From assembly GCA_004431415.1 (NCBI GenBank), contig QPMI01000205.1:1-64000 (forward strand): DNA of 64,000 bases, in the 5' to 3' direction. The notes under the pieces are model-generated. The model was not told where the DNA came from. It saw only the letters and a list, made by a program, of their open reading frames with translations, and searched no databases. This stretch comes from Cyanophora paradoxa CCMP329 (Eukaryota; Plantae; Glaucophyta). Of the stretch, positions 29,317-44,955 are shown one piece after another; position 1 is the stretch's first letter, and every line of letters begins with the position of its first letter. Made by a program: the position numbers and the translations under genes.

Positions 29317-30495
29317 CAACGTTAACATATGCCTAATCGCCGGGCCGGGGCCCGGATGTTAGTGCTTGAAGGACTTCGGCCGGGAGCTCGATCGCGAGCG
29401 TCACGGCGTGGCCCGGCGGGGCCGGCGGGGCGGGGCGCGCGCGCGCGAGCCCGCGCCGGCCCGGCGGCCCGGCTCGAGCGCTAGCTCCCGGCGCGGCGCG
29501 CGCGCGCCAGCCTACGACCGCCGCTCCGCGCCGCGGCGCCCGAACTTCGGAACGCCGATCTGTATCGCGATCGCGAAGGCTGCGCGCGCATGCACTAACG
29601 CTAGCGCTCCACCGCCGGGCCGTTGGCTGCGCATGCGCGGCCAGGGCCAGGAGTCAGTGAGCTCGAGAGCGCGCAGCTGAGGTCCTGACTGCGTATGCGG
29701 CCCCGTACGCGTCACTCGCTGCAGCTGCAGCTGGCCATGGGCCCCGGGGCCCAGCATGCGCAGCGCCGCGGTGCTGGCAGCGCTAGCTGCAGGCCGCGGC
29801 GCATGCATATATACGCTGCATGCAGCTCTAGGCAACCGGCCGCCGGGCCAGCTGCGCATGCAGGCCAGCGCTAGCGGCTGCAGGCCCGAGCTCGAGGAGC
29901 GTTTACGTACGCGTCTGAATCTAGATCTGCACTAGCTAGCTGCGGCAGGAGTGTGCTGCCGGTTAAACTTGAAACGTTACCAGTGCGACGCTGGTGCTCA
30001 TGATCAGGCTGGCGCTGTCCGTGGTGCCATGATGGTGCGCCGGCGGCGGCCCGGCGGCCCGGCGCGCTCTCAGGAAGTCGCCTCCCTGCGGAGCCGAGCC
30101 GGGCGCTCAATGATCCCCGGGGCCGGGCCCGGTACGGTCGTAAACGGTGCTCATCGTCGGCTATTTCTGGCGGTGAGCAGTAGGGCATCGGTCCTGCCTG
30201 TGTACCCCTGACCGCCGGTCACGTGCAGTCAATCGGCGATTATTATTCTGTGTAACAGTCTGTGTAAATTTAAAAATTCGAACCAGAACGGTCAGTCTCT
30301 ATGTTAAAGAATTTTACTTTTAATCAAGTTCAGATCTATGCGCGCGCACCCCCAGTGATCGAGTGCTTGCGCGGGGCCGTAACCGTTTTTTTCGCGAGGA
30401 GTGCTCGAGTACCTGTGCGAGGAGGCCAGAGGGATCCCGCCCAGCGCCCCATCCAGTCTCACAGCCGGCCGGCCGCGATTCCAGCGACCGGCGCA

Positions 30496-33325
30496 ATGGA
30501 CAGCAAACGCGTCCTCCTCTGCGCGATCTTCCTCTGTGGACTGGCCGGACGCGCGTTCGCGGCCGGAGGTGGTGGTGGCGGCGGCTCGAGCAGCAGCGCT
30601 TCCGCAGAGACAGGTGGGTCTCGCTCTCTGGCAACGAAGGAATCTCAGTCACCTAGACCCCGCCCGCGCAAAGCCCCGCCTGCGCTTGGCGCGGCGCCAA
30701 AGTTTCCCCCCCTCGCGATCTTTCCGGGCCGCGGCTAACTCGTCTCTTTCGCGATTTACGACCTGTTTGAACATCAGTTGGTGCGTAAACGCAGTTTCGG
30801 GCGCGGTTTGAGCGGCCACCCGCGGCTACTAACTGCCGCGCGCCTCGCAGATCTCGCTCGTGTGTTCCAATGGATCGACTTCGCCTTGTGCGCGAGGCTT
30901 CTTTGTATTCATTTCCGACTGTTTCTGAAGTGCGGCGTCCTCCCCCCGCAGCATGTGTGTCGGTATCATCGGGTTCTTGGCCATTTGGTGAGTAACGTCT
31001 TCTGGCCATCGCCTCTCCTTCCTGCCCATCGTTTGCTGAACTTGCGTCGATGTTTCCCGCAGGATCTGGTGCGCTTTTACCGAACTGCCGGAGCCGGCCA
31101 GTCACTTTCGAGGTAGCACGTTCGCTGACTATGTCCCTCTCTTCATATCAGGCACGGCCATCGCGAATACGTGAGTGCTTCAGTTCCTTACTACGAGTTT
31201 TGTCTACTTTGCTGATCCCACCGCGCAGTATGTGTACGCACGATTTGCTCTGAGCCCCGCAAAGGCCGGTCTTTCGGTTTCTCACGTTGGTTTTCCTTCG
31301 TTCAAACAGATTCAACTTCCTGGTCAGTGAGCCTAAGCTCGCTTCGTGGTTTGCGGCTGAAGCCGCCCTCAGGTCGTGCTCATCGCGTCTCAAGCGTACC
31401 TGCTTATCGCACTTGGCGAGGGTTCCATTGACATCAACGGCAACCAGTGTGCTCTTTTGTTGGTTCCTAGACCCGCCGAGCCTCACGACCGCGCAGCGTG
31501 AACTGGATTCGCTACCTCGATTGGTCCATCACGACCCCCATGCTTGTCATCGATCTGATGACAATCGCCGACGCGTCGTGGTCTCGCAAAGTTCTTTTCG
31601 TGCGTGGCTTTGCGGTCACGCGGTGTTTTCGTCGCTTATGTTGCCCCGCAGTGCGTGATCGACTGGCTGATGATTGCGACCGGTTTCGCCGCGGCGCTGA
31701 TGGCGGAGCCGAACCGCTGGATCCTCTACGCTTTCTCTTGCCTGTTCGAGTTCATCCTCCTCGTCGGTCTCTACAGCTACGTGAAGCCGACCATCGAGGC
31801 GCTCCCCGACAAGAAGTCGGCCTTCCTCTTCAAGATCTCCGTCGTCGTGAGCGCCTCCGCCTCCCGCTTTTTTAAGTTCCTCGTGCCGACGACCCCTACA
31901 GATGTTCTTCGCCGCCTGGACCGTGTTCCCCATCGTGTGGGCAGTCGGGTGCGCCGCCCCCTTGGGCCGGCGCCCTGGAGCGGGCCGCGCGCTCACGCTG
32001 GAGCAGCCCCGAGGGCAAGCACCACCTGAGCCTTGCCGGTGAGGCCATCCTGCACGCGGCGGCCGACCTGGTCGCCAAGGTGCTGTTCGGCTTCATCTAC
32101 ATCAAGATCGAGGACGAGAAGCACGCGGCCGAGGTCGAGGAGGAGGCGGCACGCGAGGTCGAGATCTTCATGGACCGCACCGGCGAGCGCTACGTCAAGC
32201 TCACCGCCGGCGCCGCCATCGACGATGCCGGCACCATCAAGCTCCACCCCCACAAGCTCAACAAGAAGTGCGGCCGGCGAGGCCCTGGGGCCGTGGCGGC
32301 TGGTGCTGAGCGGGGCGGGGCGCAGGATCAAGGAGTCGCACGAGGCCAAGGACAATGTGCACAAGCACCTGCACCCTCACGAGATGCACGGCCCCGACGG
32401 GCACCACGCCCACGACTCGCACCACGGCCACCCGATGCCGACCGGCATGCAGACGCCCCGCATCCCCATGGACCCCGTGGACATCGGCCCGCACAACATG
32501 GCCGAGACCCGCGGCCACATGACGCCGTACGGAGCGAAGAGCGCGCCGATGATCGTGGACCTCACCTCGATGGGCCAGGCGCGCAACGTCGTCGTGGACC
32601 CGCACGGCCCCGGCACGCCCCGCGCGATGGCCATGAACCCCGGCCGCCTCGAGCTCCACGACGCCTCGGAGGTCCGCGTCGGCGCCGACGTCTACGTTCT
32701 CGGCCCCAGTGCGCACCCCGCCCCGCCCCGGCGAGCCCTGATTGGCCGCCGCCCCGCTCACCGCCCCGGGCAGACGGCGAGAACGAGATTTGCCGTGTGA
32801 TCGGGCGCACGCCCGACGGGCGCCGCGTGCGCGTGCGGCGGTACATGTACGCCAAGGACGTGACCCGCGGCGCGCCGCGTGACTCGAAGCTCCTCTTCCG
32901 CTCCAACGCCGTCGACCTCGTCTCCGTGCGCGACGTCATCGGCTACTGCCAGGTCGTCCACATCTCCGAGGTCGACGACCTCGACATGTACGCCTCGGTC
33001 CACGACAACTGGTACTTCAAGGACAGCTGTGCGCCGCCCCGCCCCCGCCGCCCCCGCGCCGCGCCCGACTCACCGCCCCGTCCGCGCAGTCGACGTCAAC
33101 AGCCAGCAGATCGCCCCGTGGCGCCCGGGCATGGACCAGGACGAGTTCGACGGCCCGTACGACGGCCCGAACGACGGCTTCGGCGGGCGCCCGCCCTCGC
33201 GGCCGGGCTTCCGCAACGACTTCGGCGGCAACGACTACGCCGAGCCCCGGCGCAGCTTCAGCCGCGGCCCCCAGATGGCCCCCGTCAACGGCGGCTCCAT
33301 GACCCCCCGCCGCAACTACATGTAA
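30496..33325 (+). CDS. Microbial (type 1) rhodopsin with N-terminal signal peptide, His-rich linker and C-terminal BAH-like domain
   Basis: Helix B VVLIASQAYLLIALGEG; helix C WIRYLDWSITTPMLVIDL (D-T-D); helix D DWLMIATG; helix F WTVFPIVWAVGPEG; helix G EAILHAAADLVAKVLFG with retinal Lys at 32077-32079; BAH-like exons ~32650-33115; stop TAA ending 33325. Confidence 0.9.
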
Positions 33326-33732
33326 GGGCGCATAAACTCTTCTTCCTTTGTTAGGGTTTCTTCGGGATAGGGGTGGTCCAGCGCACGTGCAGGGTTCAAA
33401 AATCGTGTGCTGTGTGTACAAGCTGTTCCTTGTGAGACAGGACGTAGTCGTAACTCCTTGATCTTATTTGAGGTTTCATCATTTTTTCATCAAGGCTGAT
33501 TTATACATATACCTAAGCGTCTCCGGAGATTATGAGGCCAGGATGGCTACAAACTCCTGTCGATTCTCAGTTGTTACTTTGAGCTCTTCGGGCATCGTCC
33601 CGCTTGCCTCAAGTTGTCCATTTTTATGTGCAGTAAGTAGCGTTTTCGCCCCTCTCGTGTCAGCCGACGCGCAATATAATCGAATAGACTAGTATTTTGC
33701 AATCCCTGGTGGGGCCGCATGCGCTCAGTGCA

Positions 33733-33738
33733 CACCTA
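33733..33738 (+). repeat. Left target-site duplication CACCTA
   Basis: Identical hexamer flanks the element at 44950-44955. Confidence 0.9.
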
Positions 33739-33981
33739 AAAAAATGAGAGTACCCCCATCAGGGTGGGCCCGCCCTCTTTGCCACCCTCAACCCCCAAAC
33801 CCACCCCTCACTCACCCACTCCAGCGCCTTCCCAGCCCTCATTCTTTCCCACTCTCTCGCTACGTCTACCGCCCTTCTCTCCCTCTGGTCTACCTCCCCT
33901 TCCATCCAGCAACCGCTAGGTAGTATCTGGTGTCTAGGTCGATCGATAATGCAAAACGATATAGCAGTGAATTGAGGCGGG
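33739..33981 (+). repeat. Left terminal inverted repeat (~243 bp; similarity extends to ~34008 beyond a ~30-bp indel)
   Basis: AAAAAATGAGAGTACCCCCATCAGGG... is the reverse complement of 44707-44949, with about three inner mismatches. Confidence 0.93.
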
Positions 33982-34052
33982 CCCCCAAACGCGCCGGTCT
34001 GTGAATCAGCGATCTGACACCTATGAGTGAGGTTGCCTAGAAGCTTGGAGAT

Positions 34053-34463
34053 CTTGGACGTGAACTTTTGTCCAAAGTCACTAGGCGACCTTGGACGTGA
34101 ACTTTTGTCCAAAGTCACGAACTCCAAAACGCCACCCAAGTAAACTAGCAATTCGTGCAGGCGTCTCCTATAGTGCAAACGAGGCTATACTAGAGGTCGG
34201 ATCGTGCAAAACATGCGTTGGGATGTGCCAGCAGGGTTGAGGATCTTGGACGTGAACTTTTGTCCAAAGTCACGAACTCCAGAACGACACCCAAGTCAGC
34301 TAGCAACTCGTGCAGACGTCTCCAATAGTGCAAACGAGGCTATACTAGAGGTTGGATTGTGCAAAACATGCGTTGGGATGTGCCAGCAGGGTTGAGGATC
34401 TTGGACGTGAACTTTTGTCCAAAGTCGCTTAGCGACCTCTGGACGTGAACATTTGTCCAAAGT
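34053..34463 (+). repeat. Subterminal array: five copies of TTGGACGTGAACTTTTGTCCAAAGT (fifth slightly variant), two embedded in a 155-bp tandem duplication
   Basis: Cores start ~34053, 34090, 34245, 34400, 34439; 155-bp units 34090-34244 and 34245-34399. Confidence 0.9.
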
Positions 34464-34494
34464 ACTTGTGGACATGCCTCGAAGTTTTTTAAAA

Positions 34495-34850
34495 AATAGA
34501 TATAACCTATGGGCATTGCCCAGAAGTATTAAAAGAATAGATATTACCTATAGGCATTGCCCAGAAGTATTAAAAGAATAGATATCACCTATGGGCATTG
34601 CCCAGAAGTATTAAAAGAATAGATATTACCTTTGGGCATTGCCCAGAGCGCCGGACCGCCGGGGCATACATGGTGAACTGTATAGGCGCCCGTCTGCGCC
34701 GCCACTACCCTTGTCTGGTTGGTTCACTGTCGATTGTGCTTCGGGCCTTCGGGTCCTTCGCCTTTCGTCATAACCGTACAGCCGGCTTGGGCGTGTCTTA
34801 TACATACTCTTCTTCTAATAGATATTACCTTTGGGCATTGCCCAGAAGTT
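34495..34850 (+). repeat. 41-bp tandem repeat (x4, plus a fifth copy at ~34817) with TGGGCATTGCCCA near-palindrome
   Basis: AATAGATATTACCTATGGGCATTGCCCAGAAGTATTAAAAG units start 34495, 34536, 34577, 34618. Confidence 0.9.
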
Positions 34851-34880
34851 ACTTAATATATATTAATACTTCTGGACATT

Positions 34881-34999
34881 GCCAGCATAGAAGTTTAGAA
34901 ACTAATATTTCACTTTTATGCCAGCATAGAAGTTTAGAAACTAATACTTCACTTTTATGCCAGCATAGAAGTTTAGAAACTAATACTTCACTTTTATGC
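34881..34999 (+). repeat. 39-bp AT-rich tandem repeat x3
   Basis: GCCAGCATAGAAGTTTAGAAACTAATACTTCACTTTTAT repeated three times. Confidence 0.9.
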
Positions 35000-35053
35000 T
35001 AGCTTACTGTAATTCGACCATTTTTCGGGTAAGACTTTCTCTGCGCCACTCGG

Positions 35054-35701
35054 TCACTCCCAGCGATGCCGGAGCCCTAGCTTAGTGAAGCCGCTCAGCA
35101 TTGGCTTGTACTCGATCGCCGGCCCGACAGGATCAGCACTGCTAGAGGCGATGCGCAGGATCGATGCGTTAGCTACAGGCAGCTCGCTAGCATTCTCATC
35201 GACCTCAGGGATCGCAACGATCGTCTTGGCAGGAACAGCAGCTGCAGGAGGGGCAACCTTCTTCTCGATCTTTGTCTTCGTGATCGGTTCATTTAAAATC
35301 TTGTTTTCCATCTTAGTCTCAGCCGCGATGCCAGCTATAAGGTCACTAGCTCGCTTCTTTGAAACTGTCTTAAGACCGGTCACAGTTTTAATGAAATACC
35401 TGCTACGATTAGCCGTCTCTGAGATGTACAGCGGCCCATCGTCAGTATCCTTTAGCTTGCTAGTCTTGGTCTTCTTAGTCCGCGAATTCGGGATCTTATC
35501 AAGAATAGCGTTCTCGTCGGCGGTAAGAGCGTAATCGATGGATGCACCCTCACCGCCACCAGCGCGACGGACTAGCGGGTAAGCACCAGTATCACCACTC
35601 AAGAACTCGATGTGATTCTTCTTAGTAGGGCTGGAAGCGACTTCAAGCTGCGGAGTGCGCAGCCGAGACTGCATGTCTGTCGACTTCTTTCGCGGAGGCA
35701 T
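35054..35701 (-). CDS. Polinton hypothetical basic protein (215 aa), possibly a core/DNA-binding protein
   Basis: Intact Lys-rich ORF starting MPPRKKS (NLS-like), directly downstream of the minor capsid gene. Confidence 0.6.
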   Translation of the reverse strand: MPPRKKSTDMQSRLRTPQLEVASSPTKKNHIEFLSGDTGAYPLVRRAGGGEGASIDYALTADENAILDKIPNSRTKKTKTSKLKDTDDGPLYISETANRSRYFIKTVTGLKTVSKKRASDLIAGIAAETKMENKILNEPITKTKIEKKVAPPAAAVPAKTIVAIPEVDENASELPVANASILRIASSSADPVGPAIEYKPMLSGFTKLGLRHRWE

Positions 35702-35727
35702 CTTTTAACTAAGCAGTGGGAAAAAAC

Positions 35728-36624
35728 TTATGCGAACGATCTGTCGAAGGGGACGTACTCGCTGGCTGCATTCTTAATTGCGGATTTAGCAGCAGCAGAC
35801 GTGTAAGAGACATCCTCGATATCGAACTCTAGCACGAACGAGAACTCTGTGTTTGTGACAGCGTCTGTTCCATTATGATAGCGCAGCGATATGTCAAGTT
35901 CAGACAGCTCAGCGTTTCGATCGAAGCCTGTGACGGGAACACGATCCTCAGATGTGAACTTGATGAGCTCCCCGAATTTTGAGTCGATGTGAATCTTTGC
36001 GATCGAGCCCGTTGTATAGGGGTTAAGTGTCAAGATCGGGCCTTTGATCTGCTGAATGTACAGGAACAAATACGTGTGATAAAGTAGATCAACTGGCATA
36101 TCGCTGAACAGCTCGTACGAATATTGTACGCCATCGATTGTCTCAGGTGTGTCAAGCTCACTGGAAAGGTCACTGAGAGTCTTCGCAAACCCGAGCAGGT
36201 TCGATAGTTCGGCCGATGTGAAGCTCAAAATAAAGTCCGCTTCACACAGGAACCTAAGCCGCATTGAGATCTCTTCGAACTGAACGACGAACTTGCGCTG
36301 ATAAGTAGTTCCGCCGTAACTATACTGCTGGGTTTTAAGAAGCGTGCTTAGATAGTTTGCAAGGGAGGTTGGCGTATAGACTCCGGGCTTGAAAGTGTTG
36401 GCACGTGTTTTCTCAACGCCAGAGGGATCAAGGGTGCCGGTGATAATTGCGGCTTGTGTGGACAGGTTGAACATGTTATGAAACAGTTCTAGCGAATCAA
36501 CTCGCACCGACTTTACATTAACGAGGGGCCTTGGGAGATTGATCTTGAAATTCGAGGACGTGCCTTCGAACCGGTCCCTAGAATCGACATTTACGCGGAG
36601 CTTCATCTTTACAACAATATGCAT
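35728..36624 (-). CDS. Minor capsid (penton, single jelly-roll) protein
   Basis: N-terminal VNVDSRDRFEGTSSNFKINLPRPLVNVKSVRVDSLEL..NMFN and C-terminal LSELDISLRYHNG..EFSFVLEF, typical of Polinton/PLV mCP; start 36624 or 36606. Confidence 0.8.
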   Translation of the reverse strand: MHIVVKMKLRVNVDSRDRFEGTSSNFKINLPRPLVNVKSVRVDSLELFHNMFNLSTQAAIITGTLDPSGVEKTRANTFKPGVYTPTSLANYLSTLLKTQQYSYGGTTYQRKFVVQFEEISMRLRFLCEADFILSFTSAELSNLLGFAKTLSDLSSELDTPETIDGVQYSYELFSDMPVDLLYHTYLFLYIQQIKGPILTLNPYTTGSIAKIHIDSKFGELIKFTSEDRVPVTGFDRNAELSELDISLRYHNGTDAVTNTEFSFVLEFDIEDVSYTSAAAKSAIKNAASEYVPFDRSFA

Positions 36625-36650
36625 GAAAATTTTCTGGTCTATAATAGCAA

Positions 36651-37879
36651 ATGGCGCAAGCAGGAACAACTCTAAAGGAGCTCCTCACTACCAAAGGTTC
36701 AAGCGAACTTTATTTATCCCCAGGTCTCACTGTCGGTGTCAGCCCCAAGTTCAAGCCTTTCCTTGAAACGATCCGTCCGCGAGGCAACTCGTACGGCTTC
36801 GCGCAGACTGCCGCTTTCGACCTTCCGCGCAAGCAGCTTCTAAACGGTGTCTCGCTATACTTTAAGGTCAGCGTCGCTGGCGGAGCTGCCGCCTCGGTGC
36901 TGCCTAATGGCGCTGGTGCATTTATTGAAAACGTGCGCTTTGTTCATGGATCCTTCAAGATGGTGATCCCTGGAGACTGGCTCACTGTGAACGCGCTCAT
37001 TGATAATAGCGTTGCGTCCGCCCAGGCTTTTGCTAGCAGCTACGGCTTTGGAAAGGACGCGGCTCTTGAGATTCTCGATGCGAGTCGCGAGTACGTACTA
37101 AAGATCCCCTCCCAGCTCTGGGACAATTCGTACTTCCCGCTGCTCGCACTGGCTGACATGCCAACCGTCGAAATTGACTTCCGTTCGGCTGGCGTGGTTG
37201 GAACTGTCGCTAGTGCTGTTGCAACTCTAACGGATTGTGCCCTGGTTTGCCAGTTCGTGAATATCCTAGCGAAGAGGCTGAGTCTATGCTTAAATCTGCA
37301 AACGAGAGCGGTGGTATTCGAATTCCTTTCACCGAGATTATTTCAAAGCGCTCGAGGCAGTTAAAGACTGACGACGCGGGGAATGCAGTCGAAATCTCCC
37401 TTGCCAACGTCAGCGGCCTTGTGCACGCGATCCTGATGACAGTGCGTAATGCGAATCACCTGGGCACTCGCAATCACAATTCATTTGCTGGCAACGGAAA
37501 TGCGCTGAAAATCGATTCGTTTGAGATCATGCACAACAACCGAACTCTCGACATCAGCAATAAGCCAATCTCTGGGTTTGTATCATCGTGCTATCACATT
37601 CCAACTCAATACCGCGGTGCAACCACTGGCAATTCAGCCCTTGGCTTCGAGGACGGAAATGTCTATGGGATTGTGCTTTCGAAATCTGGCAAAGACTCAC
37701 TGCATAACGCTGTCCTCGGCTACACAGACTTCTTTAATTCCAGCAGCAGCTACTGCTCGCTAACTGTGACCGGCTGCACAAACGCAGCGCCAGCAGTTGT
37801 TGACTTCCACGTCCTGCGCCACAATGTTCTCGTAATTAACTCGTATCAAATGTCAACTCTAAAGGTAAGTAACTTCTAG
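36651..37879 (+). CDS. Major capsid protein (double jelly-roll), split by a 1-nt frameshift near 37265
   Basis: FDLPRKQLLNGVSLYF, GAFIENVRF, FPLLAL..TVEIDFR, DCALVCQFVNI; restoring one C (ATC CCT AGC) joins it to the downstream frame for ~409 aa; lies between mCP and ATPase. Confidence 0.8.
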
Positions 37880-38595
37880 ATGGATATCAAACTGTTTGAT
37901 CCTACAGAAATAAAACTGCCTAAACGGTTCTTGTTTGTCGGCCCCACCAACTCGGGAAAAGCACCTACGTTAAACACGTATTAAATGCAGTAGCTCCGCA
38001 GCTAGACGATATCTTCGTATTTAGTACCACAGCATTTACAGAACAGTGGGACGACACGACTCGCTCAAACAATATTCACGAAGAATGGGATCCAGTTTTG
38101 GTTGAGAGTCTTCTAGAGCAACAAAAAGAAAGGCGACGCAAGAAAGATGAGCGCAAGATTGCAATCGTTCTAGATGATTTGCTCGATAATGACCTTGTGA
38201 ACGTCCACAGCGACCGATTAATGCAAAAGCTTTTTACTAGTGGGCGTCATTATAACATGAGCCTTTTTGTAACCACTCAACGTCTTTGTGGAATCAGCCC
38301 TACAGTTCGAAGGAATTGCGAGTACGTCTGTTTCTCATCAATTCTCTCAAACGTTAAAGAGTTCAACTGCGTTTTCGACGAATACAACGCCGGAGCGACT
38401 CGAGCAAATCTAATGCGTCTTTTCGTTGAATTGAATCATTCGTATCAGGTTTTGATATATGAAGCTGCGACCGCGGACCGCGTTTATTCTGTTGACAAAT
38501 CGTCTGGAACGACTTCGGCTCTATTGCGCTTTGTGCGCGTAAAAAAGCAGCGCGATCAAAAGTCGGTAGCCAAGGCTGTCGCAACAACCAGCTAG
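37880..38595 (+). CDS. A32/FtsK-like genome packaging ATPase, 1-nt frameshift in Walker A (A-run ~37957-37960)
   Basis: FVGPTNSGK[ST] Walker A, IVLDDLLD Walker B, LFTSGRHYNMSLFVTTQ..ISPTVRRNC; ATG directly follows the MCP stop. Confidence 0.92.
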
Positions 38596-38746
38596 TATAT
38601 TCCGGTTTCGCTGAGGCAATCCACAGGAACGATGTGCCCTTGTAAATGCCGAACGAAATCAGATGATCAGGCGATTCGTGAGTTCTTCCAGGCCAGCAGT
38701 CTTCGAGATTAAACTCTTCCTCTACCGTTTCGAATTCGAGTTCCAT
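38363..38746 (-). CDS. Small protein with FGxYKG..PEY..WL motif (DUF3820/ExoX C-terminal-like)
   Basis: LISFGIYKGTSFLWIASAKPEYTSWLLRQPW; overlaps the ATPase 3' end convergently. Confidence 0.55.
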   Translation of the reverse strand: MELEFETVEEEFNLEDCWPGRTHESPDHLISFGIYKGTSFLWIASAKPEYTSWLLRQPWLPTFDRAAFLRAQSAIEPKSFQTICQQNKRGPRSQLHISKPDTNDSIQRKDALDLLESLRRCIRRKRS

Positions 38747-38807
38747 TAAAAAAATAATCAGCAGACAAGCTGCCTCGGCTGCGCCCAAGGGGTGTTATTC
38801 CCTTCAT

Positions 38808-39338
38808 TCAAACCTGTGGGAAGTTCAACCGCAAGAATGGTTTGTCCTCTTCGCTGGTATGTTCCAATGCATATGCATCGCGAGCACGAGCTGCAGCCTC
38901 TGCTGTTTGAAACAGACCGATGTGCTTTTGGCGGTCATTTATCTTATAGTATGCTTTCCATTTACCATGTTGCTGATGGAAGCTGACGCCAATGTATCCT
39001 GAAGTGTTATCTCGCCGCTGTCCACGATTCAAATTCTGTTGACGAGCTGTTGCTAAACGGAGGTTGTCGTGACGATTGTCTTTTGGATCGTTGTTGATAT
39101 GATCTAACGTCAACCCATTCTCAAGATTGCCACTGATGAATGTATGCAAGTACACGCTCTTTCCGTTGATTTTGGCTCGAGCATATCCATTGTCCAAACT
39201 CCAGCGAAATCCCAGCACACGCTCAGCATCATCGTGTGACACGAGAGCGTAGGCGACGATGACTTTGCGTCGATTGCGAATTCCTATCAGCGGGATCAAA
39301 GCAGTGCCCTCTGGTACATCAGGAACGATAACCTCCAT
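38808..39338 (-). CDS. HNH endonuclease fused to AP2 DNA-binding domain
   Basis: VYLHTFI..TLDHINNDPKDNRHDNLRLATARQQNLN (HNH) plus NTSGYIGVSF..KWKAY..KHIGLFQTAEAAARARD (AP2). The ORF is open up to 39407. Confidence 0.93.
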   Translation of the reverse strand: MEVIVPDVPEGTALIPLIGIRNRRKVIVAYALVSHDDAERVLGFRWSLDNGYARAKINGKSVYLHTFISGNLENGLTLDHINNDPKDNRHDNLRLATARQQNLNRGQRRDNTSGYIGVSFHQQHGKWKAYYKINDRQKHIGLFQTAEAAARARDAYALEHTSEEDKPFLRLNFPQV

Positions 39339-39469
39339 CTGCGCAGCGAGCTGCTTGTCTGCGACTTTTTTGTTACATCTACAGATTGCATTATCTTTAA
39401 GCCTCAAAAGTCGCGCTAATTTGTCTTAAAAGGATTTATGTCTCTTATTATTGAGAGACAAGCCGAACA

Positions 39470-39814
39470 ATGACTTCTGCAATTACTGCGGATTGCGCTG
39501 CGGTTAAACGTGGCCGTGGGCGACCTCCTAAGGTTCGTCTTTTAACAATGGAGCCTTATCAGCCGAAGAAGAAGGGTCCTAAACCGATCGAGGTCACCCC
39601 GGAGATTTTAGCAGAGCGACGCAGAAAGAATGCTGAACGCAATCGCAAACTGCGCCACACGAACGAAACATACCGTTTGAAACAGCTTGCCATCACAGCG
39701 AAGTATCGAGCTGAGAATCCTGATCGGATCCGGGAGTACCACAGGAATGCTATTGCGCGTAGATGCCTCGCGAAGAGCGGAGCTTCTGTAGAGCTCGAGG
39801 TGATGCAGCTTTAG
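39470..39814 (+). CDS. Small AT-hook/basic helical DNA-binding protein
   Basis: KRGRGRPPK AT-hook, followed by basic helix ERRRKNAERNRKLR. Confidence 0.65.
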   Translation: MTSAITADCAAVKRGRGRPPKVRLLTMEPYQPKKKGPKPIEVTPEILAERRRKNAERNRKLRHTNETYRLKQLAITAKYRAENPDRIREYHRNAIARRCLAKSGASVELEVMQL

Positions 39815-40700
39815 CACCTGCTCGTAGCTTTGGCTCCCCTGCAATCTCAAGCTTCTTGAGCTCTCGATACTGCCGGCTTTGGCCGCTGTATTTTTTCGTT
39901 TCGATCAAACCCTCACGTCTCAATCGTCTCTGCTGTCGCATTTGCACTTCTTCTTTTTCGATTCGTGTTTGAGGTGCAAGCTCACGCGGTTGACGTATTT
40001 CCGATGGTTTAACACGTCTAGAAATTTCCACACCCTGTTTCGTAACGAGTCGAACACGGTTCTTATCAGCGCCAGCAACTATGTACGTCTCCTTGCTTGG
40101 CTTTGTGGTTCCCTTCGCAAAAACGCTTGGCTTCGGCTCGAGAACTTGCACTTCGGTCCCTGTGCACGGTATGTTCGAATTGTCTCGTTCAATATCGTTC
40201 TGTCGCTGTCTAACTTGATGCAGCTGCTCGGCTACCTGTGTATTTTCCCGCATCCACTTCGGTGAGTGCTCCCCGCCGAAAGAGCTGTGGGCTGTTTCAT
40301 TGTACGCCTTGACAATTGCCGGCAAACGTGAGAGGAAATGCGGGGAGCCACGAGCTTCTGTATCAGTCTGAATCAGTGCTCGCAATGTCCTCGCGAACCT
40401 GTCGATAATTCCCAGCTTGGAGCCTTTTGAAATGTGATCATCCTTAGCCACATCAGTATGCATTTTCAACGAGTTCTCTTCAGCCATTTCCCGAATTGCC
40501 GCTGTGTTGAAGCCGTTGTCTCCTGAAAAGCCCCATATTCCAGGTAGCTGCTCGATCATTTTTGGAAGCTGCTTAAAAGTCTCGAGCTTACGTACCACAG
40601 CGAAACGGGTTGCAATCTCGACCGCTGCGAACAGGCGAAATCTCCCAATGAACAGCACGTCAATTTGCCACGCACCCGGTGGCGCAGTAATCTGGTACAT
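39750..40700 (-). CDS. Retroviral-like (rve) integrase of Polinton type
   Basis: WQIDVLF (D1), FSGDNGFN (D2), LGIIDRFARTLR (third acidic residue), IVKAYNETAHSS, SH3-like GTEVQVL..VFAKG..SKETYIV; fits the 6-bp TSD. Confidence 0.88.
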   Translation of the reverse strand: MYQITAPPGAWQIDVLFIGRFRLFAAVEIATRFAVVRKLETFKQLPKMIEQLPGIWGFSGDNGFNTAAIREMAEENSLKMHTDVAKDDHISKGSKLGIIDRFARTLRALIQTDTEARGSPHFLSRLPAIVKAYNETAHSSFGGEHSPKWMRENTQVAEQLHQVRQRQNDIERDNSNIPCTGTEVQVLEPKPSVFAKGTTKPSKETYIVAGADKNRVRLVTKQGVEISRRVKPSEIRQPRELAPQTRIEKEEVQMRQQRRLRREGLIETKKYSGQSRQYRELKKLEIAGEPKLRAGAKAASPRALQKLRSSRGIYAQ

Positions 40701-40709
40701 CGTTGTAAA

Positions 40710-43700
40710 TCAGGCGCGATTTTTATAATGGCCAATCGCTCGGGTGTTGATCCCGTCAGTCTCGAGGAAGCGTTTGGTATCAAGGGGATGGAGAGCCTGG
40801 CGCGAGGTTCGTTGTAAATAAATCTCATGTTGTTTCGAGCGGAAACCGAGAATTCCTTTGATGTCATACGATTGCTTTTCTCCCTCTTTAGGACAGACGC
40901 ACCGGAGGAATACATCCCTTGTGAGTCTGTTGTAGTACGTCTTTTGAATACCCTTGCATACCTGCTTGTCCGTGCAATCTTCACGCGAATAATAGTAAGA
41001 TTTCGGCCGGTTAGCGATCCACTCTGTCATTTGCAGACCATGGAGCTCATCCTTGAATAATCCCGGAGTTTTCCCCATCGATCGTAGAGCTCGAACCTCA
41101 TCGGCTGTCATGCCATCGAAGAATCGATGTGTCTCTGGGTAGTCGCTAACATCCAGCTCATGCTTGATTGAGCGTAAATCAGCATAGATATCTTTGGTGC
41201 GAACCTCGATGATGAGACTGTCAGTATCCGTACCTAATAGTGTCAGCCGCTGGCCCCAAAGCGGCTTGAGCACCTGGTAGTAAAAGCGGTACATGTGCAG
41301 CTTGGAAAGTTCGAGGATGACGAACCCGCAGTAGATAGGTTTGTTCAGATTGTACTCACTTTTGCGCTTGGAAACGAATACAAGGTTCTCTTCGTACATC
41401 ACCACCTGCTTCAACCGATTTGGTTCGCTGTTGATCTTCACCAGACGGTCTCCCGAAGTCACAAGCTCTGAAAAGCAGTGCTTTCTCACGTTCTCCATCG
41501 TCTTTCCGAAGACACTGTTGTTCATCAACTTGTAAAGGTCCTTCTGGTATGTGAACTGCGATTCTTTACGTTTTTGAGTATTGAGATCTATGAAACGCCC
41601 TAGCCATGCGCTTTGTTCGTACGATAGGACCCGATGGATGTTGGTTACTATCATTCCCAGTGACGTATAGAGCTGAAGCAAGCGTCCATCAACAACATAA
41701 TTCTTTTTTGGAAGCAGATTCGGAACGAGCTTTGGAGTTCGTTCAACTGAGGTAAGCTTCTCGTCGTTAATCATATCCTGTTGTCTCGTCGTCGTACATG
41801 AGCCACGATTCCTTGTGTGTTCGGTAGTAGTTAGACATGCATGTAGACTGTGAGACTGTAGGCTCAACAGCGTGGGTGTATTTGTTGAACTTTATGCTCA
41901 AATATTTGTTCTCAGCTTGTGCGTAGCGTTTTGAGATCATTGAGATTCCGCCCCTGATCCCCGATTCTATAAATCTGTGCATATCCTGCTGTCCCTCGTG
42001 AAAGAGCTCGAGCTTCACTCCAGTGTGCTTAAGTGCTGCCTGCCAAGCAAATCCCGGCGATGACATAAAATAGCTAGGATCTAGGCCATACGTTTCAATA
42101 CACGTATCGCGATAGTTTTCGAACACGTCCGCTAGTAACGTGATATCTGTCATCATATACTCCATTGTATAGTCTGATAGCATTCTGCAGCCGAGCTCTC
42201 GCCAAACATCCTTGGCATGTGCGTACTCATCTTTCGAGCATTTCTTCTGTTTAAGCTGATTTTTGAAATAACGACGTGCAGGTAGTTTAGTCTCTTGAAA
42301 GCGAGCCCAGCTCGTCATGTAATCATAAGGGTAAATGCCTTTGCCTGTCATCAGCTTGAACTGAGTCTCGTCCAGATGCAGCGAGCGCGTGATCTTCTTC
42401 TTTTCCGCGGGCAGAGCCTTTGCTAGTTCGTCCAAGCTTGCATTCAAGTGCTGAGCCGAGTCGCGTAGAACGTAAATTCCATACTTGAACTGCGAAATTC
42501 GCTCGCTATTCTGAAAGAACTGATCGAATTTTATCGAAAGGAGACTCTGCGGGCGGAGCCGGCGTTCGAGCCCCTTCTTCACCTTCTTTTTCTGCTCTGG
42601 GGTCATCTCACGTCCACCGTACTTGCTTTCAAACTCGCTTTCGACATGTGCTTGAAACTCCTTCCAAACTGCTAAACGGCGATTATAGCCAGATGCTAGA
42701 GCGCGCACGAGCAGGTGGAAGTCAAATCCTCGACCATTGTGCCAGAATATTGGAACGGCTGCTGCCTTTGCGCGACGCCGATTGCACGCTCTGCAGGCGG
42801 CCCCGAGGTATCGTCCAGAATCGTGGCAGTGATCGCGGTGCTTGTCTTTCGCATCCTTGAACGTGTCCGTGCACATGTAGCACTCGGTCCTCGTTTGAAA
42901 ACGCTGCTCCTCTTCCTGAGTCATCTGGATTGGTGCAGTCTCTCGCAAGAGCTCTCGAAATTGTGGTTCCATTTCGTCCAACCATTGCACGAACTTCTCA
43001 GCGCAGTCCTCGCTCTCCGAACCCATGTATTTGAAACAAAATTGTTCACCTTTCGAAGATACAACCAGACAGCCGACTGAAGCAATCACATGCACACCTT
43101 TCTTTTCGGTCTTTCCACTAATGCAGGGAATCGGCATTGTAATCGTCTCTGAATCAGCATATCCGACCAGACGTTGCCGGATTGAGTACTCATAGTTAAT
43201 AAACTTCTGGATGTGGGCTCCTTTTCTAGGCAGAACATCTCTCGCATGCTCGTCTCGATCGAGGCAACGGTCATATTTAAGATGATTCTCAAACGCAGCA
43301 CCTGAGCTAAAACCTGTTTGACACGCAAGACAATAGTGTTTGGCGGGAGAATCATGTTTTCCAAACAGACGTGAGATGTTCTTGATCCAGAGATAATGCC
43401 CTACATCATTGTCGCTGCCTGCAGGTACATACAAGATTGGTATTGCGTCTTTTGCTGCGCTGATATGGATTGGTACAATGTCCTGTTCATCTAATGCTGT
43501 CGTATAAATACATAGGTTTACGTTGTTAGCCTGCTCGAACTTTTTGAAAACCTTTGAATCTAGCGGGGTGGGAAATGTGAGCATAGTGCAGTCTAAAGAG
43601 CTCTCATACGGTCGATAATGACAAGCACTGCGTGAATCCTGGCCCGGTCGTAGCGCGTGCTGAGCTGCAAGTACAGCATACTTGAAGCATTCATTGTTCG

Positions 43701-44532
43701 GAGCATCGATATTGATGAGTGCCTGCTTCTCCACAAGCCACCGCGGGAGTATGAACCTACGTCCACGACCACCCATGCGGCGGAAGTATCGCACAGTTTT
43801 AAAGACCAGATGTATCCATGTGTCGAAAACTGAGGAATCCCTGCTTTTCTCTGTCGCAAGAATGTCTAGTTCTTCCAGCTGTGAGCGCAGAGCAGTCTCG
43901 ATGCTTGCCCCTGGCTCGATGCGATCGAAACGACGATGCTCAATAATGATTGCAATTGTTGTATCAGTCTCTGGCTTTCTGTATACCGCTAATCCAGAGA
44001 TTTGTAGTGCAATGCCCATTCTTACCGCCTCTGCAAGATTTACCTGGGCGCTAACGAATGCTATTGCGTTCTGTTTGAAAAGTTCGTTGTTCTCAAATCG
44101 GGCTTGCATCGAGGTTACGCGGCCAGAACCGCGAGGCAATTGGTATTTCCACTCCGCATATCGCCCGTCAAGCGCTGTAGTCGTATTGCTGTCATTGATT
44201 TGAACATCATCTCCACCGTCAACCTCAGGTAATTCTGAGAACCCTCGAACAATGTCGGCCTGGCCCTCAGCAATCGCTAGCTCTAGTCGACGACCTGACA
44301 CAGGACGCGCTGACCTAGGAAGTCTTGCAAGTTCGTTCAAAAGTGAAGCGTACTTTTCCAAAGTTGCAAACCGTGTTCTCGACCCTTGTGCTGAAATTCT
44401 AATCAATTTATTTTTGAAAGCTCCATGTATGACGCGTCGATTATACAATGAAATCGCGAGCGCTTCGATCTGGTCTTTGATTCTGGCCAACCGGAAGCGC
44501 CGAGTCGCTGCATTATTTTGGGTAACGTCCAT
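40710..44532 (-). pseudogene. Protein-primed family B DNA polymerase (Polinton type, endonuclease-VII-like Zn insert), disrupted at ~41785
   Basis: LINIDAPNNECFKYAV, ExoI YADSET, CYMC..RDHCHDSGRYLGAACRACN, ExoII HNGRGFDFH, KGIYPYDY, ExoIII YMMTDITLLADVFE, IRGGIS, motif B KLMNNSVFGK, motif C TDTDS; motif A breaks off after LMYDDE with a frame change. Confidence 0.9.
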
Positions 44533-44706
44533 TGGAAGTATATATCACAATTTTTTTGCTTGTTCCAAACGCAACTTCACATAGCAATATTGGAAAGGGA
44601 TCTCTTTAAGACAAAATAAGAGAAACCTCAATTGCGGTGACCCGTTGGTGATTCAAAGACCGGCGCGTTTGGGGCTCGAAGAGCAGGAAGCCTTCTGGCT
44701 GACGCT

Positions 44707-44949
44707 CCCGCCTCAATTCACTGCTATATCGTTTTGCAATATCGATCGACCTAGACACTAGATACTACCTAGTGGTTGCTGGATGGAAGGGGAGGTAGAC
44801 CAGAGGGAGAGAAGGGCGGTAGACGTAGCGAGAGAGTGGGAAAGAATGAGGGCTGGGAAGGCGCTGGAGTGGGTGAGTGAGGGGTGGGTTTGGGGGTTGA
44901 GGGTGGCAAAGAGGGCGGGCCCACCCTGATGGGGGTACTCTCATTTTTT
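44707..44949 (-). repeat. Right terminal inverted repeat
   Basis: Ends ...CCCTGATGGGGGTACTCTCATTTTTT; reverse complement of the left TIR. Confidence 0.93.
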
Positions 44950-44955
44950 CACCTA
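44950..44955 (+). repeat. Right target-site duplication CACCTA
   Basis: Matches 33733-33738. Confidence 0.9.

What the first reader, a model, noticed from the sequence alone, without database searches (positions are those of the whole stretch)
30496..33325. Microbial rhodopsin fused to a C-terminal BAH-like domain
Seen: after helix G the frame continues through two GT-AG introns into LELHDASEVRVGADVYVLGPNGENEICRVIGRTPDGRRVRVRRYMYAKDVTRGAPRDSKLLFRSNAVDLVSVRDVIGYCQVVHISEVDDLDMYASVHDNWYFKDS.DVNSQQ. Established: this follows the BAH pattern (vrvGD.Vyv, icrI, vrvrwy.r.ed, elfrS..D.v.v..IigkC.V, d.fy...yd). BAH is normally a chromatin/protein-interaction module of nuclear proteins, whereas the well-known modular rhodopsins carry kinase, cyclase or PDE effectors. 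Inference: a light-gated protein-interaction or membrane-to-nucleus signalling module, or a scaffold role for the tail. I cannot exclude that the architecture has been noted in other algal rhodopsins.
Basis: partly seen in the sequence, partly recalled or inferred. Interest (0 to 1): 0.85.

Follow-up and report, generated by a model that had tools for sequence, protein, structure and literature searches.

The report
Algal rhodopsin fused to BAH domain
In the alga Cyanophora paradoxa, a light-absorbing membrane protein that looks like a proton pump is made in one piece with a BAH domain, a type usually found in chromatin proteins. The pairing is real, but a 2023 survey already listed it, and the domain lacks the pocket that reads histone marks.

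Summary
Window 30496-33325 (+) is a 16-exon Cyanophora paradoxa gene, public EukProt model tig00000865_g5067.t1, 596 aa. It encodes a signal-peptide-like N-terminus, a 7-helix microbial rhodopsin, a ~165-aa linker, a BAH domain and a low-complexity tail. The rhodopsin scores 136 bits against Pfam Bac_rhodopsin and carries the DTD motif and the Schiff-base lysine. The linker is His-rich and poorly conserved.

Spliced RNA contigs from three studies run from the 5' UTR to the 3' UTR, so both domains sit on one mRNA.

The BAH call rests on several weak but concordant results:
- Pfam E about 6e-6, just under the curated cut-off.
- A match to a canonical BAH-PHD protein.
- MTA1 BAH as the best hit of a two-paralogue profile against solved structures.
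- BAH folds leading two structure searches.
- Protein-language-model neighbours that are mostly BAH clusters.

The architecture is not new. PMC10865886 (2023) lists CyapaRh2 and CyapaRh4 as Rh+BAH, and this gene is CyapaRh4. This scan already followed up the paralogue on other DNA (s1-517460), with the same conclusion.

New here: the methyl-lysine cage residues are replaced in both paralogues, and the linker is long and unconserved. The BAH is therefore more likely a docking or positioning module than a light-gated effector or histone-mark reader. Function is untested.

The parts
30396..33694 (+). Extent of the mRNA as seen in spliced RNA contigs (5' UTR about 100 nt, 3' UTR about 370 nt).
   Evidence: X4 record 7 spans 30396-33652, X9 record 8 spans 30472-33625, and X1 record 3 reaches 33694.
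30496..33325 (+). Coding sequence of 596 aa in 16 exons: 30496-30613, 30778-30780, 30851-30887, 30952-30987, 31063-31068, 31152-31170, 31229-31233, 31310-31322, 31373-31446, 31497-31599, 31652-31846, 31902-31948, 32007-32267, 32326-32708, 32774-33028, 33090-33325.
   Evidence: exon-by-exon match to P0001, exon lengths sum to 1791 nt, all introns GT-AG. One search gives the RNA joints.
30496..30564 (+). N-terminal hydrophobic segment that looks like a signal peptide (aa 1-23, ...GRAFA|AGGG). It implies entry into the secretory pathway with the N-terminus outside or in the lumen.
   Evidence: Hydropathy peak at aa 4-26 and a predicted helix at 3-25. The cleavage site is my inference from the -3/-1 rule. 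The paralogue has a similar segment.
30859..32106 (+). Microbial (type-1) rhodopsin domain, aa 44-252, seven helices, interrupted by introns 3-12.
   Evidence: Pfam PF01036 E 1.6e-39, 136 bits. Solved-structure matches up to 97 bits. Seven predicted helices spanning 42-268.
31519..31554 (+). Helix C motif D112 / T116 / D123 (DTD), in RYLDWSITTPMLVIDL. These correspond to bacteriorhodopsin D85 / T89 / D96.
   Evidence: Direct reading of the sequence and the alignment to MrHR. The motif is defined in PMC7541481.
32077..32079 (+). Schiff-base lysine K243 (AAG) in helix G, within DLVAKVLFGF. D239 corresponds to bacteriorhodopsin D212.
   Evidence: aligned with the retinal lysine of MrHR.
32107..32659 (+). 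Linker, aa 253-417: an extension of helix G, a short hairpin, then a His-rich segment (19 His) with low confidence in the model. Contains intron 13.
   Evidence: 15% identity to the paralogue against 40% for the rhodopsin and 37% for the BAH. pLDDT about 30 over aa 286-417. No Pfam family.
32660..33103 (+). BAH domain, aa 418-523 (Pfam envelope 422-521), split by introns 14 and 15.
   Evidence: Pfam BAH E 6.3e-6 and, on the exon alone, 2.6e-6. BLASTP E 5e-13 to the BAH-PHD protein P0004. MTA1 BAH is the top hit of the paralogue profile against solved structures. Foldseek and VIA-align top matches are BAH domains. 27 of 30 ESM Atlas feature hits are BAH clusters.
32785..32847 (+). Positions equivalent to the aromatic cage of methyl-lysine-reading BAH domains: E438 (32785-32787), R456 (32839-32841) and M458 (32845-32847). 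None is aromatic.
   Evidence: Alignment to P0004's VNWYYRP motif. The paralogue has E / R / L at these positions. Cage residues W667 and Y669 of BAHD1 are described in 10.1101/2021.03.11.435004. The E438 equivalence is my inference from the usual BAH sequence pattern.
33104..33322 (+). C-terminal low-complexity tail, aa 524-596, rich in G, P, R, D and F, predicted disordered.
   Evidence: Composition and 31% identity to the paralogue. pLDDT below 50. No Pfam family.

Best explanation
This is CyapaRh4, a nuclear gene of Cyanophora paradoxa. Shown: one mRNA encodes a rhodopsin followed by a BAH domain. Inferred from sequence: a signal-peptide-like N-terminus inserts the protein into the endomembrane system or plasma membrane with the N-terminus outside and the C-terminus in the cytoplasm. 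The 7-helix domain binds retinal at K243. It carries the full proton-pump residue set (R109, D112, T116, D123, D239, plus E221 and E231 at the positions of the bacteriorhodopsin release group). It most likely works as a light-driven outward proton pump like bacteriorhodopsin or the cyanorhodopsins. The BAH domain hangs on a flexible, poorly conserved tether of about 165 residues and lacks the aromatic cage. My inference is that it is not allosterically driven by the photocycle and does not read methylated histone lysines. Instead it acts as a protein-docking module that positions, clusters or scaffolds the rhodopsin at a particular membrane site. It would serve the same role in the paralogue CyapaRh2, whose rhodopsin has lost the proton donor (D-S-C).
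For: Single transcript: spliced contigs in three studies against an unspliced DNA run. Rhodopsin: Pfam 136 bits, the DTD motif and the lysine, and motif meaning from PMC7541481. The closest solved relatives are ion pumps: MrHR, CyR-II, SyHR and bacteriorhodopsins. BAH. The BAH is conserved between old paralogues almost as well as the rhodopsin core (37% against 40%), while the linker is not (15%). The linker gets low model confidence, pLDDT about 30. The cage W-x-Y is R-x-M here and R-x-L in the paralogue. The same BAH is attached to two rhodopsins with different helix C motifs (DTD and D-S-C), which argues that its role does not depend on the transport chemistry.
Against: There are no functional data. 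Some DTD or DTE rhodopsins, such as Neurospora NOP-1 (from my own knowledge), are slow-cycling and do not pump. The structure models rest on a two-sequence alignment (pLDDT 61 and 47), so low confidence in the linker is weak evidence of disorder. Cage-less BAH domains such as Sir3 and Orc1 bind nucleosomes, so loss of the cage does not exclude chromatin binding. Both BAH Pfam scores (26.5 and 27.4 bits) fall below the curated cut-off of 30.8. The signal peptide was not called for this protein in PMC10865886. No partner protein is known.
Confidence: 0.5

Rival explanations
1. Light-gated signalling module, the first reader's view and mechanism (i) of PMC10865886. Photoactivation of the rhodopsin changes the conformation or accessibility of the BAH, which then binds or releases a signalling partner.
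For: Other modular rhodopsins (histidine-kinase, cyclase and phosphodiesterase rhodopsins) work this way; this is established knowledge. The paralogue lacks the proton donor (D-S-C), as sensors often do. The BAH is conserved in both copies.
Against: The linker is about 165 residues, 15% identical between paralogues, differs in length between them, and gets low model confidence. No conserved coiled-coil or rigid connector was seen. This copy keeps the full pump motif.
Confidence: 0.15
2. Chromatin tether at the nuclear envelope. The protein resides in the inner nuclear membrane or ER, and the BAH binds nucleosomes without a cage, as in Sir3 and Orc1. This would be analogous to the lamin B receptor, which combines a Tudor domain with a multi-pass membrane domain.
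For: All characterised BAH domains matched here come from chromatin proteins. Cage-less BAH domains of Sir3 and Orc1 appear among the structural matches (Z 6.2-7.0). The signal-peptide route gives access to the ER and nuclear envelope. A short basic NKKIK motif is noted in PMC10865886.
Against: There are no localisation data. The discussion in PMC10865886 says these rhodopsins carry no nuclear targeting sequence, although its own Table 2 lists NKKIK for CyapaRh4. The BAH is close to neutral in charge (17 D/E, 15 K/R). Only two proteins with this architecture were found, in one species.
Confidence: 0.12
3. The BAH and tail are cleaved off the membrane anchor and travel to the nucleus, like a membrane-tethered regulator. 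This is mechanism (ii) of PMC10865886.
For: The long exposed linker would be accessible to proteases. BAH domains are normally nuclear.
Against: No cleavage motif or conserved site was seen in the linker. The free fragment would carry no DNA-binding or effector domain. There are no protein data.
Confidence: 0.05
4. The BAH is a decaying remnant of an old domain-shuffling event with no present function.
For: Pfam scores are below the curated cut-off. The cage residues are lost. There are very few relatives in 1.84 billion representative proteins.
Against: The BAH is 37% identical between paralogues whose linker has fallen to 15%. The reading frame is intact across two introns and is expressed. 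The charged replacements at the cage positions (E and R) are conserved in both copies.
Confidence: 0.08
5. Artefact: two neighbouring genes wrongly merged by gene prediction or by transcript assembly.
For: RNA contigs are assemblies, and a contig across two genes does not by itself prove one transcript (caveat printed).
Against: The frame is open and continuous across all joints with no stop. Three independent studies give the same joints. The contig lengths fit one 1791-nt coding sequence plus UTRs. A paralogue on another contig has the same architecture.
Confidence: 0.02

Closest known systems
CyapaRh4 and CyapaRh2 of Cyanophora paradoxa, listed as 'Rh, BAH' in PMC10865886 (Biophys Physicobiol 2023)
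   Same: This gene is CyapaRh4: the listed NKKIK motif is at aa 304-308. The paralogue P0003 is CyapaRh2: it contains the listed SFSEDGRKLRVRRFLRARRMARVQ and VRPP strings.
   Different: The paper is a domain survey. It gives no transcript evidence, no analysis of the cage or linker, and a putative role ('transcriptional regulation') inferred only from the domain name.
Cyanobacterial rhodopsins: Mastigocladopsis halorhodopsin (MrHR), Synechocystis halorhodopsin, cyanorhodopsin and cyanorhodopsin-II
   Same: These are the best solved-structure matches of the rhodopsin domain (89-97 bits). Most cyanorhodopsins share the DTD motif and pump protons (PMC7541481).
   Different: They are bacterial, about 230-260 aa, and have no signal peptide, C-terminal linker or BAH. 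The margin over haloarchaeal bacteriorhodopsins (77-85 bits) is small, and no tree was built.
Enzyme rhodopsins and other modular rhodopsins (histidine-kinase rhodopsins, rhodopsin-guanylyl cyclase, rhodopsin-phosphodiesterase, bestrhodopsins)
   Same: An N-terminal rhodopsin with a C-terminal cytoplasmic module on one polypeptide.
   Different: In those proteins the module is an enzyme or a channel, coupled through a short structured connector. Here it is a non-catalytic BAH behind a long, unconserved linker.
Methyl-lysine-reading BAH domains (EBS, SHL, AIPP3, BAHD1, BAHCC1, TNRC18, ORC1, DNMT1 BAH1)
   Same: The same fold by predicted-structure matches, with Z 6.5-7.9 and 80-100 aligned residues.
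   Different: The cage W-x-Y is R456-x-M458 here. The protein is a membrane protein, not a soluble nuclear factor.
Cage-less BAH domains that bind nucleosomes or partner proteins (yeast Sir3 and Orc1, MTA1, Rsc2, polybromo)
   Same: MTA1 BAH is the best sequence-profile hit (E 0.0086) and the top hit of the unbiased fold search (Z 7.7). These domains act as protein-interaction surfaces without a methyl-lysine pocket.
   Different: All of them sit in chromatin complexes. No membrane-anchored example is known to me.
Cyanophopsin 1 and 2, the cyanelle-envelope opsins of Cyanophora (Frassanito 2010, 2013; proteome in PMC4510345)
   Same: Same organism, and also microbial rhodopsins.
   Different: They are different genes with long N-terminal extensions and no BAH. 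The helix-C strings of this gene and its paralogue are absent from the held cyanelle proteome tables.

Membership tests
Microbial (type-1) rhodopsin, Pfam PF01036 | Profile match above the curated cut-off. | tested here: met
   136.1 bits against a cut-off of 24.6, E 1.6e-39, profile positions 4-219 of 224. Single exons also pass the cut-off.
Microbial (type-1) rhodopsin, Pfam PF01036 | Seven transmembrane helices with a retinal-binding lysine in helix G. | tested here: met
   Seven predicted helices spanning 42-268 and matching hydropathy peaks. K243 aligns with the Schiff-base lysine of MrHR.
Outward proton-pumping rhodopsins (bacteriorhodopsin / cyanorhodopsin type) | DTD motif in helix C (acceptor, Thr, donor) together with the Arg82 and Asp212 equivalents. 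| tested here: met
   D112, T116, D123, R109 and D239 are read directly from the sequence. The motif is defined in PMC7541481.
Outward proton-pumping rhodopsins (bacteriorhodopsin / cyanorhodopsin type) | Light-driven proton transport. | not testable with these tools
   Needs heterologous expression and pH or current recording.
BAH domain, Pfam PF01426 | Profile match above the curated cut-off (30.8 bits). | tested here: not met
   26.5 bits, E 6.3e-6 for P0001. 27.4 bits, E 3.3e-6 for the paralogue. 27.8 bits for the central exon alone. The matches are significant by E-value but below the gathering score. The database's precomputed annotation does list PF01426.
BAH domain, Pfam PF01426 | Sequence similarity to a canonical BAH protein. 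| tested here: met
   P0004 (BAH 52.6 bits plus a PHD finger) matches at E 2.8e-4 across 1.84 billion proteins, and at BLASTP E 5e-13 pairwise. The paralogue profile's top hit among solved structures is MTA1 BAH, E 0.0086.
BAH domain, Pfam PF01426 | BAH fold. | tested here: inconclusive
   The model has mean pLDDT 61, about 80 in the core. About 44 of the 50 best Foldseek matches are BAH domains, but the best E is 7e-3 and TM-scores are 0.35-0.48. VIA-align Z is at most 7.9, with BAH giving the longest alignments and Tudor/chromo barrels tied on Z. Consistent with BAH, but the scores are moderate.
Methyl-lysine-reading BAH subclass | Aromatic cage, including the W-x-Y of the W[FY]YRP strand. 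| tested here: not met
   R456-Y-M458 here and R-F-L in the paralogue, against W-Y-Y in P0004. The cage role of W667 and Y669 in BAHD1 is shown in 10.1101/2021.03.11.435004.
Enzyme rhodopsins | A catalytic effector domain (kinase, cyclase or phosphodiesterase) after the rhodopsin. | tested here: not met
   No Pfam family other than Bac_rhodopsin and BAH (plus a DUF3933 match at E 0.38, below its cut-off) in 596 aa.

The most novel reading that the evidence does not exclude
A retinal protein of the nuclear envelope whose cage-less BAH grips nucleosomes in the manner of Sir3 or Orc1. It would tether chromatin to a membrane that is energised or sensed by light. This would be a lamin-B-receptor-like link between a rhodopsin and the genome, found only in glaucophytes.
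Probability: 0.08. Interest if true: 0.9.

Novelty: already known. Interest (0 to 1): 0.38.

Why it matters
A rhodopsin joined to a chromatin-type domain is unusual among modular rhodopsins. In 1.84 billion representative proteins, the search here detected it only in two Cyanophora paralogues. If the BAH proves to be a docking module, it would show how an early-branching alga positions a proton pump. It would also offer a small natural targeting tag for optogenetic tools. If it binds chromatin, that would be a new kind of link between light and the genome. As it stands, the architecture is published but untested. This report adds transcript proof, the loss of the cage, the nature of the linker, and the contrast between the paralogues (DTD against D-S-C).

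Tried and rejected
- **Full-length profile search.** The two-paralogue alignment run through the search for homologous proteins returned only the query itself. The 8000-candidate limit was probably swamped, I suspect by low-complexity words from the disordered tails. The search on the C-terminal region also found only the query.
- **Metagenome and genome scans.** The metagenome scan and both scans of bacterial and archaeal genomes chose over-specific peptide patterns and confirmed nothing. I could therefore not test the cyanobacterial affinity of the rhodopsin with a tree, nor look for environmental relatives.
- **Paralogue locus.** The look-up of encoding contigs had no record for the paralogue, so I had no DNA for it and could not compute dN/dS.
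- **BAH segment alone against solved structures.** phmmer gave only chance hits to arabinofuranosidases.
- **P0002.** This 2039-aa chicory protein scored E 5.5e-19. It is a tandem-repeat protein whose 16 weak partial matches add up. I rejected it as a relative; it has no Pfam family.
- **Cyanelle-envelope location.** The proteome tables of PMC4510345 list Cyanophopsin 1 and 2 but contain neither helix-C string of the two Rh-BAH proteins.
- **Neighbouring ORFs upstream (22-30 kb).** None has a Pfam family.
- **Frassanito 2010 paper.** It is not held in the library.
- **Joined exons.** I never joined exons into a typed or scripted protein. Whole-protein analyses used the public model P0001 by id, after checking it against the window exon by exon.
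Full report
**What is in the sequence.** The window is very GC-rich, up to about 83% in 2-kb bins. The finding spans a multi-exon gene on the + strand. Three-frame translation shows a signal-peptide-like start and then rhodopsin helices spread over short exons.

I searched the exons one at a time, by reference. Pfam gave:
- Bac_rhodopsin on 31498-31599 (28 bits) and on 31652-31849 (28.7 bits).
- BAH on 32773-33027 alone (E 2.6e-6, 27.8 bits, profile positions 32-105 of 121).

A region-restricted search with the mechanical ORF 32080-33351 returned a public gene model, P0001. P0001 is EukProt EP00741 Cyanophora paradoxa, tig00000865_g5067.t1, 596 aa. I then checked that model against the window exon by exon. 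There are 16 exons that sum to 1791 nt. Every exon of 6 nt or more translates to the expected stretch of P0001; the 3-nt exon, and the 5-nt exon at its corrected coordinates, rest on their AG/GT flanks and on the length accounting. All 15 introns are GT-AG.

**One transcript.** I laid four public runs on 30300-33700. Three runs from three different studies (X1, X4, X9) each hold one contig of 2.0-2.2 kb. These contigs run from the 5' UTR (30396) to the 3' UTR (up to 33694) with the introns removed. The removed introns include the three after helix G: 32268-32325, 32709-32773 and 33029-33089. The DNA-like run X15 holds the whole stretch unspliced.

The runs are labelled RNA only by a guess. However, spliced sequence that is absent from the DNA run can only come from RNA. 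In X4, the 118 nt between genome positions 30613 and 31372 equal the sum of the small exons in the model. That sum includes micro-exons of 3, 6, 5 and 13 nt. So the refutation condition 'transcripts end or stop before ~32650' is not met.

**The rhodopsin.**
- P0001 scores 136 bits against Bac_rhodopsin over aa 44-252.
- Helix C carries D112, T116 and D123. This is the DTD motif of bacteriorhodopsin (acceptor, Thr, donor), as defined in PMC7541481.
- R109, W113, W209, D239 and the Schiff-base lysine K243 are present.
- E221 and E231 sit where bacteriorhodopsin has its proton-release glutamates. This last point is my own alignment from knowledge of bacteriorhodopsin.
- The best solved relatives are cyanobacterial pumps: MrHR and its proton-pumping mutant at 92-97 bits, cyanorhodopsin-II at 93, cyanorhodopsin at 84-90, and Synechocystis halorhodopsin at 89. 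Haloarchaeal bacteriorhodopsins score 77-85 and Acetabularia rhodopsin II scores 81. The margin is modest, and I could not build a tree.

A hydrophobic N-terminal segment (aa 4-26...AFA|AG) looks like a cleavable signal peptide (the cleavage site is my inference). With the usual type-1 topology, this puts the C-terminal extension in the cytoplasm.

**The BAH domain.** The evidence is individually weak but points one way.
- Pfam BAH gives E 6.3e-6 (26.5 bits) for P0001 and E 3.3e-6 (27.4 bits) for the paralogue. Both are below the curated 30.8-bit cut-off.
- An exhaustive HMMER search of 1.84 billion representative proteins with the central exon found only four proteins: the gene itself, the paralogue P0003, a canonical BAH-PHD protein P0004, and a repeat-protein artefact (P0002). 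P0004 scores 52.6 bits against Pfam BAH and matches here at BLASTP E 5e-13.
- A profile of the two paralogues ranks MTA1 BAH first among solved structures (E 0.0086) and also picks up DNMT1 BAH.
- An AlphaFold model from the two-sequence alignment has mean pLDDT 61, about 80 in the beta core. About 44 of its 50 best Foldseek matches are BAH domains, though the best E is only 7e-3.
- VIA-align gives Z up to 7.9 to EBS, SHL and MTA1. In the search that does not depend on Foldseek, MTA1 BAH is first. BAH domains give the longest alignments, with Tudor and chromo barrels tied on Z.
- 27 of 30 ESM Atlas feature hits are BAH clusters, with a top score of 0.93.

I accept the domain as a divergent BAH.

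**What kind of BAH.** Methyl-lysine-reading BAH domains use an aromatic cage that includes the W-x-Y of the W[FY]YRP strand. Mutating W667 or Y669 in BAHD1 abolishes H3K27me3 binding (10.1101/2021.03.11.435004). Aligned to P0004's VNWYYRP, this protein has VRRYMYA, so W becomes R456 and Y becomes M458. The paralogue has VRRFLRA. The upstream cage tyrosine position appears to be E438, conserved as E in the paralogue; that equivalence is my inference. So the canonical cage is absent in both copies and is replaced by conserved charged residues.

**The paralogue and the linker.** P0003 (tig00000849_g4760, 854 aa) has the same architecture. Identity between the two copies, by region:

| Region | Identity |
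|---|---|
| Rhodopsin | 40% |
| BAH | 37% |
| Tail | 31% |
| 165-aa linker | 15% |

The linker also differs in length and composition. Here it has 19 His, whereas in the paralogue it is rich in K, S and P. The full-length model has low confidence overall. It shows seven helices, a short hairpin, pLDDT of about 30 from aa 286 to 417, the beta-rich BAH, and a low-confidence tail. The paralogue's helix C reads D-S-C, so it has lost the proton donor.

**Interpretation.** A domain kept through deep paralogue divergence is functional. Three observations argue against direct photocycle-to-BAH coupling of the kind seen in enzyme rhodopsins:
- It sits behind a long, unconserved tether.
- It is attached both to a pump-like rhodopsin and to a donor-less one.
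- It lacks the methyl-lysine cage, which also argues against histone-mark reading.

I therefore favour a light-driven proton pump, or in the paralogue a slower-cycling relative, whose BAH serves as a docking or positioning module. My confidence in this is about 0.5.

The rivals, with my estimates, are:
- light-gated signalling, 0.15
- nuclear-envelope chromatin tethering through cage-less nucleosome binding, 0.12
- a vestigial domain, 0.08
- cleavage and nuclear transfer, 0.05
- a merged-gene artefact, 0.02

[quoted passage not shown] It tabulates them as 'Rh, BAH: transcriptional regulation' and sketches possible mechanisms. Its motif strings identify this gene as CyapaRh4 (NKKIK, aa 304-308) and P0003 as CyapaRh2. 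No other paper in the library links rhodopsin and BAH.

The known cyanelle-envelope opsins, Cyanophopsin 1 and 2, are different genes. The helix-C strings of the two Rh-BAH proteins do not appear in the held cyanelle proteome tables of PMC4510345.

This scan had already followed up the paralogue on another piece of the genome and reached the same reading (s1-517460). I saw that note only after making the cage analysis myself.

**Verdict.** The architecture is already known but functionally untested, and interest is moderate.

Noticed in passing
window 30778-30780, 31063-31068, 31229-31233, 31310-31322: The 5' half of the gene has four micro-exons of 3, 6, 5 and 13 nt, plus a 19-nt exon at 31152-31170. 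All are flanked by AG/GT. They are required by the public model and by the length of the RNA contigs. A 3-nt exon (TTG) is unusual.
   Followed up: partly
window 30614-33089 (introns 1-15): Intron GC content jumps from 0.50-0.69 in introns 1-11 to 0.83-0.90 in introns 12-15. Exon GC rises with it. The step lies between the helix F and helix G exons, not at the rhodopsin/BAH boundary. The cause is unknown.
   Followed up: no
window 32107-32659 (aa 253-417): The linker has 19 histidines in 165 residues, for example HKHLHPHEMHGPDGHHAHDSHHGHP. The paralogue has no such run. It could bind metal or buffer protons near the cytoplasmic face of the pump; this is speculation.
   Followed up: no
rhodopsin domain, window 30859-32106: The closest solved rhodopsins are cyanobacterial: MrHR, cyanorhodopsin-II and Synechocystis halorhodopsin. 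This is a lead for an endosymbiotic origin of a glaucophyte rhodopsin. No tree was built because the genome scans failed.
   Followed up: partly
paralogue P0003 (tig00000849_g4760, not in this window): The second Rh-BAH protein has D-S-C in place of DTD in helix C. It also has a roughly 300-aa repetitive tail rich in G, S, R and P, with repeated units such as GREQESRSPQLGGGG.
   Followed up: partly
window 33733-44955: A block of about 48% GC begins roughly 40 nt after the 3' end of the mRNA. I did not examine it.
   Followed up: no
window 30589-30762: A low-depth (2.9) unspliced contig in run X1 covers the exon 1 / intron 1 boundary. It is probably pre-mRNA or trace DNA rather than an isoform.
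   Followed up: no
P0002 (Cichorium endivia KAI3510545.1): A 2039-aa tandem-repeat protein reached E 5.5e-19 against the BAH exon only because 16 weak partial matches were summed. It is a warning about repeat proteins in phmmer tables.
   Followed up: yes
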